Source of the DNA: Guillardia theta CCMP2712
Lineage: Eukaryota; Protista; Cryptophyta
Length of the DNA stretch: 64,000 nucleotides
Assembly (NCBI RefSeq): GCF_000315625.1
Contig: NW_005434597.1
Coordinates: 46,924-110,923, forward strand
Direction of reading: 5' to 3'
Positions 33,189-48,943 of this stretch are shown here, one piece after another (positions within the stretch are counted from its first letter, which is position 1; every line of letters begins with the position of its first letter). The notes below the pieces were generated by a model. The model did no database searches and had not been told where the DNA came from. It was given only the letters and a program-made list of their open reading frames with translations. The translations under genes were made by a program, and so were the position numbers.

Positions 33189-35267
33189 TCAGCTGTCTCC
33201 TCCCCTCCTCGTCATCTTGGCGACGAACAGACCGCTCGTCCCCGACGTCTCCTGGTCGAAGTACCAGGTGCCCTCGATGCCTCCTGGGCGGCAGGGGAGT
33301 GAGAGGTGCGACGGCATCTGCTCCATGCGGGCGTTGGGCTCGACCTGCAGGAACCAGGAGACGATCTGCTCGTTCTGTTTTTTGTCGAAGCTGCAGGTGC
33401 TGTAGATGAGGGAGCCGCCAACCCTGATAGACACTGAGATCAGAGCAGCGAGGAGGGGGGGAAGGGAGCGGTGGGCTGCGTTACTTGAGGTGTCGAAATC
33501 CGTTGACGAGCAGAGCTCGTTGAAGACTCTCGAGGGAGTCCAGACGTCCTTCTCTGTTCCAACGTCTCTCCATCGTCGACCAGCCCCACTTGTCTGTCAG
33601 CACCTCGCTCAGCTTGTCCCCACCCGAAATCTTCGCTACCAAACTTGGACATGTGACGTGAGGACGCGTCGTGCGTGCACTCAGCGTCGACGAGAACCTT
33701 GTCGAAGCCTCCATGACCCGCCTGCTATGCAGGAGGTGAGGGGCTCGAGCAGGGACAGAGTAGGGAGGAGAGAGGGAGAGAGGGAAGGAAGGTTAGGAAG
33801 GGGAGAGAGAGGGGGGGGAGATGAGAAGGAAGGANNNNNNNNNNNNNNNNNNNNNNNNNNNNNNNNNNNNNNNNNNNNNNNNNNNNNNNNNNNNNNNNNN
33901 NNNNNNNNNNNNNNNNNNNNNNNNNNNNNNNNNNAGGGCAGGGAGGGCAGGGAAGAAGGAGGGCAGCGAGGGGAGGGAGGGGAGGGAGGGCAGGGACTGT
34001 TTACCTGAGCCATTTCACCTGTAGTTTCTCCTTCCTCCCAGCTCCAGTGACTCACCTGCGGCGTCTCGAAGAAGTATCGGGCAGGAGCTTCCTCTCCTTC
34101 CTGTGGCAGCCCAGCAGCACGTGTGAGGCTACAGGAGGTGTCGGCGCCTCCTCGTAACCTTCGCGTCTTGCACAGGCACTTCCCTCGCGCTTCTCTTCCT
34201 CCTCTTCCCGATGCTTCGATCTGCCTCGGCGATTCTTCGCAGAAACCTTATTTTCTCCTCCTCGGCTGCCTCTTTGGAGCACATCCGGGGCCGCGGGGGC
34301 AGGAAGGAGGCCCCATCCTCGAGGTAGAGTCGGATATTCCTCTGCTCGTACCTGCCGCCCCTTGAGTTGTTGGTCAGCACACTAACGAGATCACTTGCGC
34401 AGGACGGTCTTGGTGGCTGCCAGCCTTGGCATCGACACGTCAACGCCTACCACGAAACCTGCTCTCGTCGCACTCGCATCCTCACTCGCCTCACTCCCAT
34501 GCGGTTCTTGCGCTGCAGCGGGTGAGGGAGGTCAACGTATGACTAGACACCTCACTCAGACTGGGCGGACAAACTCGGTCGGCTAGCATGCAGAGCTTCG
34601 CGCCTGGAGCGCCTGGAGGGCAGTGAGCAGAGGGACGCGAAAGAGATGGAGACGCCACAGCAGAGATCCAAGACGATTTCTCCCGCTCGAGGGTCGAGGA
34701 TGTGAACTAATGGCTTACTGTCATCCGTAGCAAATTGAAGTCGAGCAGCGAGAAATTGGAAGGATGAGAATGGGAAATGATAGGGGAAGGACGAGGACGG
34801 TCGCGTAGAAGCAAGAGAAGAGGAGATGGTGGGGGGGGAGACAGAAGGCGAAGGAGGCGGAGGAGGGAGGAACCTGCAGCTGCTGATGCCGCATCGATGC
34901 CGTAAACTTGCCCCTGCTTGTACGGCTCCCACGTGGAGAGTTTCATCGATGCTCTGGGGAGACCACCTCAAGGTCAGCACAGAGAAGAAGGAGAGTCAAC
35001 GTACGGGAGAGCAAAGACGCCAGGGAGCCAGTCGACGGGACGAGGAGACAGCGAGGTGCTGAGGGGTGCCTGGGAAGTGTTGGACGGACTAGATGAATGG
35101 ACAGAGAGGGAGGGGGAGGAGGATCTGTGGAGAGAGGCCTCAGGAGGAGGATGCAGTGCCAGGAGACATGCTAGAATGCTTGACGCTCCTGCTCCTCTCT
35201 CTCCTGCTCCTCTCTCTCCTGCTCCTCCTCTCCTCTCGTTCAGCCTCACGTATCGCAACCCCGACAT
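33189..35267 (-). CDS. NOL1/NOP2/Sun-family RNA m5C methyltransferase
   Basis: GEIVLDLCC/APGAK, GFDKVLVDAECTHD, RVGGSLIYSTCSF...NEQIV, TSGLFVAK; the gene spans an N gap. Confidence 0.85.
33835..33934. other. Assembly gap (other gaps: 43551-43650, 49676-49908, 51819-52041, 52697-53483, 56112-56210)
   Basis: N runs, mostly next to purine-rich or (CAT)n low-complexity introns. Confidence 1.
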
Positions 35268-42621: not shown

Positions 42622-43682
42622 CTATACGTTCACTATCTCATGGCTCTGATAGAGGCCGTGCGCCTCCTGCCTTGCTTGACCTCTTGTTGTCGTCCGCGTC
42701 ACCTGCTCCTGCTCCTGCTCCTGCTCCTCCTCCATCGTCGCGTCCTCCCCCGTCACCTTCAGCCTGCAATGCTGGCATGCTCGTTCCTCCCATCCGCCCC
42801 ATCCCATCTCTGCGGCACACATGCAGCAGCTCCACCATGGGTACTGTGAGAAGTGAGGGGAAGCGAGGAGAGGTCAAGAGACTCACGTCCTGCGAGCGAG
42901 AAGAAGAGAGGAGCGCGGGAGAAGAAAGAGAGTGAGAAGCAGCAGCAGCAAGAGAGCATGCTTACCCCCTGAGGATGCGAGGGAGGAGGAGAAAGCGGCA
43001 CAAGAGTCAGAGGAAGGCGAGGAGACAAAGAGACAGACCGACTGCAAGAGAGTCAGGGAGAGCGACAGCCGAGGAGGGGAAGGAGATGAAGATGAGAAGC
43101 TGACATGCAGCACGACAGAGCATGGGGGGGAGGTAGGAGGAAGGAGAGGAGAGAGTGGAGTAAAAGGGGGTCGAAGCTGAGAGGTCGAGACTCACACAAA
43201 CGTTGACTTGAGTTGGTCCTGAGGCCACTGGTACCTGAAGGGCAGCTTCACGAGCAACTTACATGTCTTCATTCCGGCTGCTGCTCACCCCGCACCGCTG
43301 GCAGGCATGCGGCATCGCCTCCGCTCAGAACTCAGACGATCTGCGAAAGATCAGTCGACATGTCGTTCCTCTCACGTCATAGAAGAGTAACGCCAACATG
43401 GAACGAAGGGGAGGAGATCAGAGACGGAGGACACCAGGACTCAACTTGATCCCCTTCTTTCAACAAGAACATCATCATCACCATCACCACCACCACCACC
43501 ACCACCACCACCATCTTCTTCCACTTCCTTTCCACTTCCTCCTCCTCCTCNNNNNNNNNNNNNNNNNNNNNNNNNNNNNNNNNNNNNNNNNNNNNNNNNN
43601 NNNNNNNNNNNNNNNNNNNNNNNNNNNNNNNNNNNNNNNNNNNNNNNNNNATCATCACTTCATCATCAACTTCATCATCATC

Positions 43683-43714
<32 letters not shown>

Positions 43715-43754
43715 CATCATCTTCATCTTCATCACCATCATCTCCATCACCATC

Positions 43755-43786
<32 letters not shown>

Positions 43787-43969
43787 CAACTTCATCATCA
43801 TCATCGTCATCATCATCATCATCACCACCACCATGATCGTCGTCTCACCTGTGACTTCACTCCCCGACGAGTATCATCAGCTCTGTTCATTCTTCCTCCC
43901 GCTGTTCCTCCCAGTGTTCCTCCCGACTCAGCTTCAGACTCAGCTTGAAGTGAGTGGAGTGAGGGCCAT
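42622..43969 (-). CDS. Multi-exon hypothetical protein
   Basis: First exon MALTPLQAESEAESGG...GVKSQ followed by GTGAG; further small spliceable pieces at 43200-43330, 42890-42965 and 42750-42840. No family recognised. Confidence 0.3.
43470..43835. repeat. (CAT/CAC)n trinucleotide tract around a gap
   Basis: Seen directly. Confidence 0.9.
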
Positions 43970-44129
43970 TAGTGGGTATGAGGGAGATGAATGCCGGGAA
44001 AGTACTCCGGGCAGATCGCAACCAATTCTTTATGGAGCTGAATTTATTCCATCAAAAATTGAAAATTACATTTACCACCATGGAAATATTGGAAAACAAA
44101 CTGAATTGAACTTCCAGTACCCACCAGTT

Positions 44130-45060
44130 CCGTGACCCCCCAACTCCTCAATCTACACCCCTTCTACCCCCCAGAAAGTACCCCACCCTCCAATAGCACT
44201 AGAGACTTCTTCAGGCGACACCCCTTATCGAAATGGACCCCAACCACCCCCGCTCTATCCTACCCCTACCCCCCGTACACAAGTACCCCTGTGTATCTGG
44301 AATGAACCCAATAACCTCTCTCAGTCACATTGGAAACACCCCCCAGTCCTATACCACCCCACCCATAGGTTTCCTACCCATGGAATGCACATAACCCCCT
44401 CAACTACCATTCACCACCCTACATATTCACTATTGAACCTTTTCACTCAGCGTACTACCCCCCCTGTTTCTCTGTCGACTCTTTCCTACTACCCCACCCA
44501 CCAAGGTCTCCTTCGATCGGATTTACTGGCTTACCTCGCACGTCCCCAATAGTACCCCTCATTATGTAGGATCTTGAGCCTCTAAACGGTGGGTAGGGTG
44601 TAGGAGGGGTCGTCACCTCCACATCCTGCAGTTTGGGGGTAGTCGACGATAATCAACGACAGAGAGAAGATGGGGAGGTGGGGTGGTCATCGGATGGGGG
44701 TGGGATGGGGGAAGGGGCGGATGATTTCGCTTGACGGGGTGGGTGGATGGGAGGGGGTATGAGGGGTTGACATGACGGAGGAAATGTGAGGAGGACCAGG
44801 AGATAGGGGTAGTAGTCATCAGGGGTAGTGTGCGTTGTGTGACGATGGTGGGTGGGTGAATTTAGGGGAATAGGGTAGTTGGAAGGGTTCCTAGGGGGTG
44901 GATTGTTCGCATGTACGTGGTTGAGGGGTGGGGTGGGTATTGGGGGTGGGGTAAAAGAACCGACCTGCGCGGTCCATGAAGTAATGGAGGAGAGGTTGCG
45001 ATGAATGAGGGGGAGGGGGAGGAGGGGGAGAAGGAAGAGGAGGAGGAAGGGGAAGGACTT
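44130..45060. promoter_or_regulatory. Divergent intergenic region with mirror-image skew: TACCCC/C-rich left half, GGGGTA/G-rich right half
   Basis: The composition switch near 44520-44590 is visible; a regulatory role is inferred only from its position. Confidence 0.4.
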
Positions 45061-45593: not shown

Positions 45594-48500
45594 ATGCCAA
45601 CAAGGTCGCCCACTATTGACCCAAGAGATGACCCTATGGTCCAGCGGCTCAACGCCATCATGGAAGTTGTAGCCATACAGAACAACTTTGCACATGCAGA
45701 ATCGCTTCATCCAAGATCAGATGGACATTGCTTGGTTCAATATCCTGCGAACTATTGCAGAGACAGAGATGTAGAGAGATTCCACAAGGCCAGTGCGGAA
45801 TTTGTGTTTCCGCTTCAAATTGGTATTCCGGGTCGAGTTTGGAAGAGCAAAAGGTTTGCCTGGCACGGTGACGTAGCTACTTTGCCGTCAACCATTTATC
45901 TTCGAACAGAACTAGCTAAACAATCGAATCTTCACGGCTGTGTTGCGGTTCCTGTTCAAGTGGAAGCGGGATCTTTCTTTGTTGTTCTGTTCTATTGCTC
46001 CTATGAGCTTGGCTCTAGTCACATCGTGGAGAAGTTGCTGCAGAGCATTCAGAGTTCATTGGGCGGTGAGGGTATCTTGCCAAGAATGCTCATCCCTGAG
46101 GCCACTCCAAGTGAGGTAGACGTGGTGATAGGAAGCCGAAGTGTGCTTTCAAAGAGCAGAAGTTGGTTAAAGTGCGAACTTGCATTGCAGAAACCAGCGG
46201 AGATTCGGGGTAACGATGATGTAGAGGATATTATGAAGTTTACTCGGCGACTCGAGTTCTTCAAGCACATGGCTGAGGCACAGCGGTATCAACTCTGTCA
46301 TAGGATGACGCTGCAGCGAATCAACGGGGGCGAGCTTCTGCATCGCTCGACAGATCTCCCGGATCAATCGCTTTGGAGGATTGTTGTGCTCGGGAGAGTA
46401 GCAGTCTACGTGACTGAACCCTATGGCAATCCAAGTTATCCCGTGTGGCACTTCGACAGCGGACAAACGTTTGCGCAGTCATACCTCAACTTATTCTTGA
46501 ACAACTATGGCATCACTGCTCACATTCAATCGGTCACGCAATGCCAGTGCCTCCAAGTTCGGATCCCTCCAGAAATGCAGGAGGAATTCAAGGCGTGGAC
46601 AAGACCGCTCTGGTACGAGGAGCTCACTCGATACTTTGGAGTTTCGATCAACGAAGCAGGGGAGGCGCTAGGCATGTGCACGAGCGCGATCAAGAAGATC
46701 TGCCGGCGACATGGAATAGCGCGATGGCCTCATCGTAAGATTGCGAGTGTGGACAAGACTATCAGCTCACTGCAGCAGCGGATCAAAGAGATGGAGCTCT
46801 CTCAGAGTCACGATGGCGATGCCATCGCGAACCTCCGCTCGGAACTGATGGATGCGGTTCGCCAACGCATGCAGTGCGGATCGAATCGTCCTACTTTGCC
46901 TGTCACAACAGGAGACGAAGAGGAGGAGGAGGTGACGGTCTTGAGATATGTTTGATGCGTATGATGATTTTGGAGCAGGATGATGATGATTCGGAGAAGA
47001 GCTCGAAAGGGAGGAGGAGGGCCAAGAAAGAGAATATCAGAGACTCACCGACTGCAGACTCCCCATCTGACAGCAACTCGAGGGAGTCTCCTATCGACGA
47101 GACTTCGAGAAAGCGAGGGTTGATGGAGTACCAAGGGACGCACCCTGTAGAGTTTGGCATCATGCAGCATCAGCTCAACCCGATCCAATCTGTTCACATC
47201 TTCGATGAAGACCAGGAGCTACACGGGGACGAGTCTCCCTCCGACCAGGACCTCTACTCCACCCCGATCAACATTCGTGCCTCCTCCTTTGACAGCTCTC
47301 AGGTGAGTTGGGATTTCGACTCTTATACTTTAAATGTCTTACACGCCTGACATTTGTGCAGGGTATCGATTCTATCTTCCTCGACTCCCTGGATCAGCCC
47401 TCGTCGAACATGCACAACCAACTGCAGGGAGGAGGTGAAGGCTGTCCTTGCGAGTTTCTCGTCTCACGCGACCCTACAGGGAGCATGAGGTCTTCGACTT
47501 CGCTGGGTCAGGCGTCAGCGGAGACCATGGCGAGCGTGTTCGGCGCTGGTGAGCCAGGCGAGGCTGCTGTTGTCTGTACTGACCTGGAGCTGGTAGCGGG
47601 TATCCCTGTTGCTAGTGGTGGCGGTAGCGGTGGAGGAGGAATGGGGTCGATTGGTATGCAGCGACAGAGTGAGGGAGCAGCGCGCTATGGTTCGCAGCTC
47701 ATCGTTGACTTCAGATGACATGGGGGGCTACGGCTATGGAGTGAATCGACCTGCAGGCAAGACGAGAACTTGGCCATTGCCGAACTGACTTGCATCTCTA
47801 GTATACCAGCAGCAGGAAGCACAGTACTCGGCTGTGAGCGGCTCTATGCAGAATCCTTCTGGTTTCGTTGGGCAGAACATGTGAGACCTTGGCCGGCCTT
47901 TACCTGCCTGACCCTCCCATCCTCCATACTGCTTCTTACGCTCTGACCTTCCCATCCTCCATACTGCTTCTTACGCTCTGACCTCGCTCTGCTTCTCTCC
48001 ATGTCTCCCTTCCTCTCCTTCCCCCCTGATCTCTGCGTTGGCTCCTCCCCTCATGCATGATGGGCCAGGAGGTACCCCAACTCGTACCAGGGAGGTTCGG
48101 AACAGCCCTTGAAGACCATGAGGAGCGGTGCGCAAGGAGGGATGTGGATGAACACTGTCGACTCTCTTCATCCGATCCCGGAGAATCGTCAGGCCTATCA
48201 CAATCAGGTGAAGAGAGGGAGCGAGGGAGCGAAGGCCCTGTGACTCGTGTTCCTTTAGATGCCGCAGCACCCTGGACTTGTACAGCACGATACCCAAGGA
48301 AGGGGAGGAGGAATGGTGAACCACCAGGTGATAGAGGACCTCCAGGTAGTGCGTGAACTGACAGCAGCAGCTTTACCAGCAGCAGCAGCAGCCTCAGCAG
48401 CCTCAGCAGCAGCAGCAGCCTCAGCAGCCTCAGCAGCAGCCAGCTGTTCAACAATCACTTGCTCGGCACGACATGTCACGGCCTGTGCTGGTGAAGGAGT

Positions 48501-48772
48501 GAGAGTGCGGGAGGATGATGATGACGAGGAAGCAGATTGTGCGGGGAGCAACAGTGCCGGAGGAGGTGCAGGAGGCGATGAGGAAGTGGAACGTCCAACG
48601 AGTGGTGAGGAAAGGAGGAATGAAAGGGGAAGAGGTTGAAGTTGAGGCAGCGGAGGAGGGAGAGGGTAGAAAGGTGGGGGGTGGAGACGGAGGTGGCGGT
48701 GGAGGGGTAGCTGACCGTCAGGTTTGCAGTCTCAGGGACTTCAGCCTGTCACCTTCGAGTTCGCGTGATTGA
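45594..48772 (+). CDS. RWP-RK (NIN-like) transcription factor: GAF-like domain + cyclic-nucleotide-binding-like domain + RWP-RK + Q-rich tail
   Basis: GIPGRVWKS...IYLRTELAKQSNLHGCVAVPV (NLP-type GAF); LQKPAEIR...LEFFKHM...IVVLGRVAVY...GQTF (CNB fold); ELTRYFGVSINEAGEALGMCTSAIKKICRRHGIARWPHRKI; later exons include polyQ/P at 48363-48440. 3' exons approximate. Confidence 0.88.
47908..47983. repeat. Intronic 35-bp tandem duplication
   Basis: ctgacc(c/t)tcccatcctccatactgcttcttacgct x2. Confidence 0.85.
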
Positions 48773-48943
48773 TATCCTCTAACATGTTGCACATGTACCA
48801 ATAGCTTCGCTCATCCCTAAACTCGTTGTTTCCTTGTTCGCCTCCCTGGTCTCCCCCCCTCCCCCCGCGTCTCTTCCTCCCCTCCTGCCTCTTCTCTCAT
48901 GTCCCCCTGGTCACAAGGAGCATACTAAAGCGAAAGTGAAACT

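What the first reader, a model, noticed from the sequence alone, without database searches (positions are those of the whole stretch)
45594..46870. GAF + cyclic-nucleotide-binding-like + RWP-RK: a two-sensor NIN-like transcription factor
One exon encodes an NLP-type GAF (F..AS..F.F..G.PGRVW; YLR...A....LHGCVAVPV), then a CNB-fold segment (LQKPAEIR.NDDVEDI...LEFFKHM...LCHRM...IVVLGRVAV...GQTF), then a canonical RWP-RK. Known plant NLPs are GAF-like/RWP-RK/PB1, with the N-terminal region sensing nitrate. I do not know of a described RWP-RK factor with a CNB domain. The phosphate-binding cassette is degenerate (FAQ...GITA in place of FGE...R.A), so the ligand may not be cAMP/cGMP. Inference: a one-component regulator integrating nitrogen status with a second signal, CRP-like in logic, in a eukaryote.
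Basis: partly seen in the sequence, partly recalled or inferred. Interest (0 to 1): 0.82.

Follow-up and report, generated by a model that had tools for sequence, protein, structure and literature searches.

The report
Cryptophyte GAF–pseudo-CNB–RWP-RK transcription factor
This cryptophyte alga gene encodes an RWP-RK transcription factor whose DNA-binding domain is preceded by a GAF sensor domain and a cyclic-nucleotide-binding fold, a combination found in no paper searched here, but that fold has lost every residue needed to hold cAMP or cGMP.

Summary
ORF 45594-46955 (+) is exon 1 of a spliced, expressed gene on Guillardia theta scaffold JH993041.1. It encodes three domains.

- **GAF:** NLP-type by Pfam GAF_NLP (31 bits, cut-off 24.1). 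The predicted fold matches GAF domains at Z 11-16.
- **CNB fold:** the family profile matches Epac2 at E 2e-10. The AlphaFold2 model has pLDDT 89, and every top Foldseek hit is a CNB domain.
- **RWP-RK:** canonical, E 3e-19.

A helical hairpin and a long low-complexity tail follow. There is no PB1 domain.

All named family members are cryptophytes (Guillardia, Chroomonas, Geminigera, Rhodomonas, Baffinella), in several paralog groups. The one exception is a pair of divergent proteins from an unidentified EukProt transcriptome (TSA GILK01). That pair keeps a near-canonical Epac-like phosphate-binding cassette and passes Pfam's cNMP_binding threshold.

The window protein lacks the cassette Gly, the Glu/Lys and the Arg, and also the β2-β3 loop Gly that co-varies with the Arg. 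cAMP or cGMP binding is therefore unlikely.

My best reading is a GAF-regulated RWP-RK factor in which a conserved pseudo-CNB acts as an allosteric relay onto the DNA-binding domain. A non-nucleotide ligand is not excluded. The "two-sensor, nitrogen-integrating" reading is untested.

No paper searched here links RWP-RK with a CNB domain. I rate it a new variant of a known kind, of moderate to high interest.

The parts
45594..48836 (+). Whole gene: start codon at 45594, stop at 48766-48768, poly(A) site near 48836
   Evidence: An MMETSP transcript ORF (P0167) starts at 45594 and is 100% identical over exon 1. JGI model P0001 maps to 45636-48604. Raw RNA reads show junctions 48489>48535 and 48603>48729 and poly(A) tails at 48836. 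Stop codon position.
45594..46931 (+). Exon 1, which carries all three domains. A GT donor follows at 46932.
   Evidence: tblastn of P0001 and P0167 gives 100% identity to 46931, resuming at 46973. Sequence read.
45636..46085 (+). NLP-type GAF domain (ORF aa 15-164)
   Evidence: Pfam GAF_NLP E 2e-7, above the cut-off. In the AF2 three-domain model, aa 1-150 match GAF folds: bHLH-MYC_N 7fdl Z 16.4, and fRMsr and PDE GAF domains at Z 11-12.
46086..46151 (+). Flexible linker between GAF and CNB
   Evidence: pLDDT is below 50 at model residues 161-168. The region is variable in alignment A3.
46152..46613 (+). CNB-fold domain (ORF aa 187-340): N-terminal helices with an Epac-type L-x-K-P...R...D-x-E-x-I motif, an 8-strand β-roll, and C-terminal hinge helices
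   Evidence: Profile against PDB: Epac2 E 2.3e-10. AF2 pLDDT 89.4. Foldseek: Epac2 E 1.4e-9. VIA: 1o7f Z 14.0. Atlas fold hits are all CNB.
46470..46526 (+). Degenerate phosphate-binding cassette equivalent (F-A-Q-S-Y-L-N-L-F-L-N-N-Y-G-I-T-A-H-I)
   Evidence: The HMMER alignment to Epac2 places F-A-Q on F-G-E. The model has a helix at 116-122 between β6 and β7. Translation.
46614..46751 (+). RWP-RK DNA-binding domain (ORF aa 341-386). It begins directly after the CNB C-helices.
   Evidence: Pfam PF02042 E 2.8e-19. Three helices at model residues 327-358.
46731..46871 (+). Two long helices after the RWP-RK motif (putative dimerising helical hairpin or zipper)
   Evidence: AF2 helices H366-388 and H394-412. 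Conserved across the family in A3.
46973..48768 (+). Downstream small exons encoding an acidic, Ser-, Gly- and Gln-rich low-complexity tail with no recognised domain
   Evidence: tblastn mapping of P0001. Pfam on P0001 finds nothing there. The last two introns are confirmed by RNA reads.

Best explanation
This is a nuclear gene of the cryptophyte Guillardia theta. It encodes a lineage-specific RWP-RK transcription factor with this domain order: NLP-type GAF, linker, Epac-type CNB fold, RWP-RK helix-turn-helix, helical hairpin, and a long low-complexity tail that is probably an activation region.

The architecture is shown. The CNB fold is a pseudo-receptor: it keeps the β-roll, the N-terminal helices and the hinge helices, but has lost every residue that contacts the cyclic phosphate and ribose.

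The rest is inferred. The GAF domain is the input module, for a small ligand or a partner protein. The conserved CNB fold works as an allosteric relay or autoinhibitory hinge. Its C-helices run straight into the RWP-RK domain, so the fold could control DNA binding or dimerisation, geometrically like CRP/FNR but without cAMP.

The ancestor of the family probably had a cNMP-competent CNB. A divergent relative, from an organism I could not identify, still has a near-canonical cassette. The biological role is probably NIT2/NLP-like nutrient-responsive transcription. That rests only on the GAF_NLP kinship.
For: - **Domains:**
- **Compact three-domain model:** pTM 0.80, pLDDT 83.9.
- **Coupling of CNB to RWP-RK:** the Epac2 structural alignment runs from model residue 178 to 354, through the hinge into the first RWP-RK helices.
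- **Lost cassette residues:** Gly to Ala, Glu/Lys to Gln, Arg to Ile, plus a 4-residue insertion. The window protein also has no Gly in the β2-β3 loop. Kannan et al. report that this Gly co-evolves with the cassette Arg, and that PDZ-GEF is a natural non-canonical case (PMC2246266).
- **The degenerate cassette is under constraint:** T113, Y118 and F122 are invariant and F114 nearly so. The CNB domain averages 61% column identity over 16 sequences from two or more paralog groups.
- **Intact relatives:** P0065 and P0069 pass Pfam cNMP_binding (33.4 and 30.8 bits against 27.5). The P0069 cassette aligns ungapped to the Epac2 cassette, including Gly and Arg.
- **Expression and splicing:** an MMETSP transcript is identical over exon 1, and RNA reads show the junctions and poly(A).
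- **Conservation across cryptophytes:**
Against: - No ligand-binding, DNA-binding or expression-response data exist.
- I could not inspect model coordinates or PAE. The relay role, the pocket state (filled or empty) and the inter-domain contacts are therefore inferred only from pTM and secondary structure.
- The strong conservation of the S-Y-[LM]-x-[LM]-F cassette helix fits a new ligand site as well as an intramolecular contact.
- The best structural matches of the GAF domain are plant bHLH-MYC N-terminal domains, which bind proteins rather than small molecules. The GAF input may therefore be a partner protein and unrelated to nitrogen.
- The direction of change, intact to degenerate, rests on parsimony, not on a rooted tree.
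Confidence: 0.55

Rival explanations
1. True two-sensor factor. The remodelled CNB pocket binds a second small molecule that is not a cyclic nucleotide, for example a nucleoside, 2-oxoglutarate or another metabolite. The GAF binds nitrate or another nitrogen signal, and the two inputs are integrated on one polypeptide.
For: CNB folds with non-canonical cassettes are known to bind other ligands: CooA binds heme and CprK binds chlorophenols (PMC2246266). From my own knowledge, NtcA binds 2-oxoglutarate. Trypanosome PKA-R structures with inosine or guanosine appear among the fold hits (6hyi, 6hyq). The replacement cassette residues are strongly conserved rather than decayed. The review PMC13766177 reports that the GAF-like N-terminal region of NLP7 binds nitrate.
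Against: No ligand is indicated by any test here. No polar or charged residue is invariant across the family in the cassette loop at the Arg position, which is I, V or L in groups A and B. Conservation is explained equally well by an intramolecular contact. No nitrate-binding residues of the GAF domain were tested.
Confidence: 0.25
2. The CNB domain of the window protein still binds cAMP or cGMP in a non-canonical way, making this a eukaryotic CRP-like cyclic-nucleotide-gated transcription factor.
For: The closest sequence and fold relatives are the cAMP-binding Epac2 domains. Relatives P0065 and P0069 have near-canonical cassettes.
Against: Three residue classes that contact the ligand or couple to it are missing: the cassette Gly, Glu/Lys and Arg, and the β2-β3 Gly. 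The cassette is also 4 residues longer. The window protein scores only 15.6 bits against 27.5 for cNMP_binding. PDZ-GEF, with a similarly altered cassette, is classed as non-canonical.
Confidence: 0.07
3. The biological role is cell-type or sexual differentiation, like the RWP-RK factors MID and RKD, not nutrient signalling. GAF and CNB would act as protein-interaction modules.
For: RWP-RK genes are greatly expanded in cryptophytes: 56 in Rhodomonas salina (bioRxiv 10.1101/2023.09.20.558689), and 18 first-reader notes record arrays in this genome. The best structural matches of the GAF domain are protein-binding bHLH-MYC N-domains.
Against: The GAF matches the NLP-specific Pfam model above its threshold. 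From my own knowledge, MID and RKD proteins lack GAF domains.
Confidence: 0.25
4. Artefact: a gene-model fusion, or a chance resemblance of the middle segment.
For: The single-sequence Pfam hit is sub-threshold. The MMETSP transcript P0167 is chimeric at its 3' end.
Against: All three domains lie in one uninterrupted ORF and exon. The same order recurs in at least 30 cluster representatives. Profile E 2e-10, AF2 pLDDT 89, and all fold hits are CNB domains.
Confidence: 0.02

Closest known systems
Plant NIN-like proteins (NLP7) and, from my own knowledge, Chlamydomonas NIT2
   Same: An N-terminal NLP-type GAF domain and a canonical RWP-RK domain followed by helices. NIT2 also lacks PB1 (own knowledge).
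   Different: No PB1 domain. A complete CNB fold sits between GAF and RWP-RK. None of the RWP-RK-only hits among the best 150 of the representative search showed it.
Epac2 (RapGEF4) CNB-A, and the PDZ-GEF (RapGEF2/6) CNB domain
   Same: These are the closest sequence and structure relatives of the middle domain, including the N-terminal helical motif. PDZ-GEF likewise has a non-canonical cassette without the Arg.
   Different: The output domain is a DNA-binding RWP-RK, not RasGEF. The cassette is remodelled differently (T-F-A-x-S-Y, plus 4 residues).
Bacterial CRP/FNR/NtcA one-component regulators
   Same: The same layout of β-roll, C-helix and helix-turn-helix on one chain. DNR sensor domains appear among the fold hits. 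Many members use non-cNMP signals.
   Different: The helix-turn-helix is RWP-RK, not HTH_Crp. The CNB is closer to eukaryotic Epac than to CRP by sequence. There is an extra N-terminal GAF, and the gene is eukaryotic with introns.
Plant bHLH-MYC N-terminal domain (MYC2/3, EGL3)
   Same: The best structural matches of the GAF-like domain (Z 13-16). There is also a weak Pfam and PDB sequence hit.
   Different: A different DNA-binding domain and no CNB. The Pfam score is below the family cut-off.
P0065 and P0069 (EukProt, TSA GILK01, organism not identified)
   Same: The same GAF / CNB / RWP-RK order, homologous over all three domains.
   Different: They retain an Epac-like cassette (F-G-K...R) and the β2-β3 Gly, and pass the Pfam cNMP_binding threshold. 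Identity to the window protein is only about 24%.

Membership tests
RWP-RK transcription factors (PF02042) | RWP-RK domain with the R-W-P-x-R-K motif | tested here: met
   E 2.8e-19, 69 bits against a cut-off of 29.3. The motif RWPHRK is present.
NIN-like proteins (NLP) sensu stricto | N-terminal NLP-type GAF-like domain | tested here: met
   GAF_NLP 31.1 bits against 24.1. GAF fold at Z 11-16.
NIN-like proteins (NLP) sensu stricto | C-terminal PB1 domain | tested here: not met
   No PB1 at E<=0.1 in the 787-aa model P0001 or in paralog P0009.
NIN-like proteins (NLP) sensu stricto | Nitrate binding by the N-terminal region | not testable with these tools
   Known only for NLP7, as reported in the review PMC13766177.
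Cyclic-nucleotide-binding (CNB) domain superfamily | Eight-strand β-roll with a helix between β6 and β7, flanked by N- and C-terminal helices | tested here: met
   AF2 topology. Foldseek and VIA hits. Profile E 2.3e-10 to Epac2.
Cyclic-nucleotide-binding (CNB) domain superfamily | Pfam cNMP_binding gathering score | tested here: not met
   The window protein scores 15.6 bits against 27.5. Ten of 16 family members match at E<=10, best 3.5e-6. P0065 and P0069 pass.
Functional cAMP/cGMP receptors | Cassette F-G-E/K...R-[ST/A]-A with the phosphate-binding Arg, and the co-varying β2-β3 Gly | tested here: not met
   F-A-Q ... I-T-A with 4 extra residues. There is no Gly in the β2-β3 loop of the window protein. 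Criteria from PMC2246266.
CRP/FNR regulators | CNB domain followed by a CRP-type winged helix-turn-helix | tested here: not met
   No HTH_Crp hit. The DNA-binding domain is RWP-RK. Only the layout is analogous.

The most novel reading that the evidence does not exclude
The GAF-CNB-RWP-RK family descends from a eukaryotic transcription factor gated directly by a cyclic nucleotide. That state may survive in P0065 and P0069. In cryptophytes the CNB pocket has been re-tooled to read a different metabolite. The window protein would then be a eukaryotic one-component, two-input (GAF plus CNB) transcription factor, a counterpart of bacterial CRP/NtcA logic.
Probability: 0.2. Interest if true: 0.85.

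Novelty: new variant of a known kind. Interest (0 to 1): 0.6.

Why it matters
From general knowledge, eukaryotic cyclic-nucleotide effectors are kinases, GEFs, channels and a few others. The 2007 census of CNB domains lists CNB fusions to DNA-binding domains only in prokaryotes (PMC2246266). A eukaryotic family that places a CNB fold directly in front of a DNA-binding domain is therefore unusual.

The family contains one branch with an intact cassette and a cryptophyte-wide branch with a conserved but nucleotide-incompetent cassette. That contrast gives a natural system for studying how a CNB module is repurposed.

It also adds a defined, testable regulator to cryptophytes, a group whose nutrient-responsive transcription is, to my knowledge, essentially unstudied. 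It extends the known architectures of the RWP-RK/NLP family beyond GAF-RWP-RK-PB1.

Tried and rejected
- **Weak single-sequence hits:** phmmer against PDB gave ferritin as its top hit (E 0.008). I rejected it because the family profile gives CNB domains at E 2e-10, with ferritin only at 0.15 or worse.
- **Other weak Pfam hits** (Cys_rich_CWC, SH3_2, Cupin_1): sub-threshold, and inconsistent across members.
- **'CNB-only' relatives** (P0036, P0072, P0074, P0187): these are the same family, truncated by gene callers at an intron right after T-K-P-L-W-Y-K. They are not a separate architecture.
- **The 1485-aa MMETSP transcript P0167:** its FG, WW and Kelch C-terminus does not map to the window and matches another protein of the cluster. 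I read it as an assembly chimera.
- **The organism behind TSA GILK01:** two paper searches and one supplement look-up found nothing. A word search with P0069 found no further relatives with the three-domain architecture.
- **ESM Atlas feature search:** the nearest clusters are bacterial cNMP+GAF and chlorophyte RWP-RK+GAF_NLP at 0.77-0.81. These are leads only.
- **Read laying:** the one raw RNA run is 3'-biased, and only about 6% of it was read. It confirms the 3' exons and poly(A) but says nothing about exon 1.
Full report
**What is in the sequence**

The window holds an uninterrupted ORF at 45594..46955 on the + strand, 453 aa. Pfam finds a canonical RWP-RK domain at aa 341-386 (E 2.8e-19). 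It also finds the NLP-specific GAF model at aa 45-153 (E 2.1e-7, 31.1 bits against a curated cut-off of 24.1).

The segment between them gives only a sub-threshold cNMP_binding hit when scanned alone (E 0.016, 15.6 bits against 27.5). A single-sequence PDB search is ambiguous, with ferritin at 0.008 and the RapGEF6 CNB at 0.029.

**The gene and the organism**

A word-index protein search found a 787-aa JGI model that is 100% identical (P0001), plus 16 full-length or partial relatives. P0001 maps to the window as one large first exon (45636-46931) followed by several small exons up to about 48604.

An MMETSP transcript ORF (P0167) starts at the ORF's own ATG (45594). It is 100% identical over exon 1 and follows the same downstream exon blocks as the JGI model for 741 aa. 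Its further FG, WW and Kelch C-terminus does not map to the window and is most likely an assembly chimera.

Raw RNA reads from a 3'-biased library show the last two introns (48489>48535 and 48603>48729, both GT..AG). They also show poly(A) tails at about 48836. The stop codon is at 48766-48768. In ten probable RNA runs from five studies the contigs hold about two thirds of the locus's sampled words, as expected for a spliced mRNA.

The identical RWP-RK fragment sits on NCBI assembly GCA_000315625.1, scaffold JH993041.1. From my own knowledge that assembly is Guillardia theta CCMP2712.

**The middle domain is a CNB fold**

Four lines of evidence agree:

- An alignment of the middle segment from 16 family members (A1; mean column identity 61%), used as a profile against all PDB sequences, hits only CNB domains at significant E-values. 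Epac2 CNB-A scores 2.3e-10, RapGEF6 CNB 2e-7, and PKA regulatory subunits and PKG 4e-5 to 3e-3.
- Ten of the 16 members match Pfam cNMP_binding individually, best 3.5e-6.
- AlphaFold2 on A1 gives pLDDT 89.4 and pTM 0.84. The topology is three N-terminal helices, eight strands with a short helix between β6 and β7, then C-terminal helices.
- In Foldseek against the PDB, every one of the 50 hits listed is a CNB domain, led by Epac2 (E 1.4e-9), and at least 500 hits reach E<=0.001. A fold search of the ESM Atlas returns only CNB-containing clusters, with TM up to 0.73.

The N-terminal helices carry the Epac/PDZ-GEF-type motif (L-x-K-P...R...D-x-E-x-I). The nearest kin are therefore eukaryotic Epac-type domains rather than bacterial CRP.

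**The three domains together**

AlphaFold2 on a 20-sequence alignment of the first 425 residues (A3) gives pLDDT 83.9 and pTM 0.80, with a disordered linker at residues 161-168.

An exhaustive structural comparison gave these matches:

- Residues 1-150 have a GAF fold. The best matches are plant bHLH-MYC N-terminal domains at Z 16.4, 15.4 and 13.2. Free Met-sulfoxide reductase, PDE, histidine-kinase and phytochrome GAF domains follow at Z 10-12.
- Residues 173-355 match Epac2 CNB-A (Z 14.0).

The Epac2 alignment runs through the hinge into the first RWP-RK helices. The DNA-binding domain therefore starts where the lid region of a CNB domain lies. Two long helices (366-388 and 394-412) follow the RWP-RK motif. 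No PB1 or other domain is found in the low-complexity C-terminal 350 residues.

**The cassette**

In the HMMER alignment to Epac2 and in the model, the canonical F-G-E/K...R-x-A is replaced by F-A-Q-S-Y-L-N-L-F-L-N-N-Y-G-I-T-A:

- Gly becomes Ala.
- Glu/Lys becomes Gln.
- Arg becomes Ile (I, V or L across groups A and B).
- The loop is 4 residues longer.

The window protein also lacks a Gly in the β2-β3 loop. Kannan et al. 2007 report that the cassette Arg co-evolves with that Gly. They also report that families such as PDZ-GEF and CooA have non-canonical cassettes with other functions (PMC2246266).

The replacement residues are not decayed. T113, Y118 and F122 are invariant and F114 nearly so in the cryptophyte alignment. 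The pocket region is therefore under constraint for something other than cAMP or cGMP.

**Distribution**

I ran an exhaustive HMMER search of 1.84 billion representatives with a CNB+RWP-RK profile. I then scored the hits locally with GAF, CNB and RWP-RK HMMs built from the family. About 30 cluster representatives carry CNB+RWP-RK. They fall into these groups:

| Group | Members | Architecture |
|---|---|---|
| A | P0001-8, includes the window protein | GAF+CNB+RWP-RK |
| B | P0009-17, about 38% identical to A | GAF+CNB+RWP-RK |
| C | P0025-29 | CNB+RWP-RK, no GAF detected |
| D | P0023, Rhodomonas | GAF+CNB+RWP-RK |
| – | P0036, P0072, P0074, P0187 | Same family, cut by gene callers at an intron just before the RWP-RK domain |

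Every named source is a cryptophyte: Guillardia, Chroomonas sp. CCMP1168, Geminigera cryophila, Rhodomonas salina, R. abbreviata and Baffinella.

The only others are P0065 and P0069, from a EukProt transcriptome with TSA prefix GILK01. I could not identify its organism. They have the same three-domain order. They pass the Pfam cNMP_binding threshold at 33.4 and 30.8 bits. They keep the β2-β3 Gly. The P0069 cassette aligns without gaps to the Epac2 cassette, including Gly and Arg. The most parsimonious reading is that a nucleotide-competent CNB was ancestral and was remodelled in cryptophytes.

None of the RWP-RK-only hits in the best 150 had a CNB match. More distant fusions scoring below about 74 bits would not have been listed, so absence elsewhere is not proven.

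**Literature**

Full-text searches for RWP-RK together with 'cyclic nucleotide-binding', 'cNMP' or 'cAMP-binding' returned nothing relevant. RWP-RK with Guillardia returned only a TAP census and a Rhodomonas salina transcriptome paper that counts 56 RWP-RK genes.

Earlier first-reader notes of this scan record many RWP-RK arrays elsewhere in this genome. None of them mentions a CNB domain.

The 2007 CNB census classes eukaryotic CNB domains into kinase, Epac, channel and miscellaneous enzyme fusions. It lists DNA-binding fusions only in prokaryotes. Automatic annotation may already flag the fold through PROSITE, SUPERFAMILY or Gene3D signatures in InterPro. I could not check that.

**How it most likely works**

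*Shown:*
- The architecture.
- Expression and splicing.
- Family conservation.
- The loss of cNMP-contact residues.

*Inferred:*
- The GAF is the regulatory input. It could be nitrate or another ligand by analogy with NLP7, or a partner protein by analogy with its best structural matches.
- The CNB fold acts as a conserved pseudo-receptor whose hinge helices feed directly into the RWP-RK domain. It would control DNA binding or dimerisation.
- The tail acts in activation.

I put about 0.55 on this reading. I put about 0.07 on residual cNMP binding. Whether the biological role is nutrient signalling or differentiation is open.

**Verdict**

This is a new variant of a known kind: an RWP-RK/NLP-like factor with an inserted CNB fold. 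It is conserved across cryptophytes and absent from every paper I could search. Interest is 0.6. The most novel reading not excluded is a eukaryotic CRP/NtcA-like one-component regulator, at probability about 0.2.

Noticed in passing
P0019 (ENA metagenome protein, 444 aa): The same NLP-type GAF domain (50% identical to the window protein's; GAF_NLP E 2e-8) is fused to four or more Tudor/Agenet chromatin-reader repeats instead of CNB+RWP-RK.
   Followed up: partly
P0065, P0069 (EukProt, TSA GILK01): GAF-CNB-RWP-RK proteins with a near-canonical Epac-like phosphate-binding cassette. They are candidate eukaryotic transcription factors that bind cAMP directly. The source organism could not be identified with the tools.
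   Followed up: partly
P0167 (MMETSP transcript, 1485 aa), against window 45594-48345: The transcript ORF matches the gene for 741 aa. It then continues into an FG-repeat, WW and Kelch region that does not map to the window. This is probably a transcript-assembly chimera with P0168.
   Followed up: partly
P0036, P0072, P0074, P0187 (metagenomic and NCBI gene calls): In other paralog groups an intron lies exactly at the CNB / RWP-RK boundary, after T-K-P-L-W-Y-K. Gene callers therefore truncate the proteins there. In the window gene this boundary has no intron.
   Followed up: partly
P0040, P0061, P0064, P0071, P0082, P0083, P0088, P0093, P0125: Large proteins (860-2650 aa) with two to five tandem CNB domains detected by the family CNB HMM. 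One is annotated 'CRP-like cAMP-binding protein'. Their origin and function were not examined.
   Followed up: no
window 43398-44135 and the N runs at 33835, 43551, 49676, 51819, 52697, 56112: There are six assembly gaps in the window. The ORF upstream of the gene (43398-44135) is a His-run and Ile-rich low-complexity artefact that spans a gap.
   Followed up: no
window 48368-48440 and 48900 onward: A Gln-codon repeat lies in the gene's tail, and the read tool skipped it. A 930-nt Logan contig of very high word depth (842) extends about 600 nt beyond 48900, well past the poly(A) site at about 48836. This suggests a longer 3' UTR isoform, an overlapping transcript, or inflation by G/A-rich repeats.
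   Followed up: no
same genome, other pieces (first-reader notes): Eighteen first-reader notes describe tandem arrays and homogenised cassettes of short RWP-RK genes in this genome. The GAF-CNB type is one conserved subfamily within a large RWP-RK expansion.
   Followed up: no
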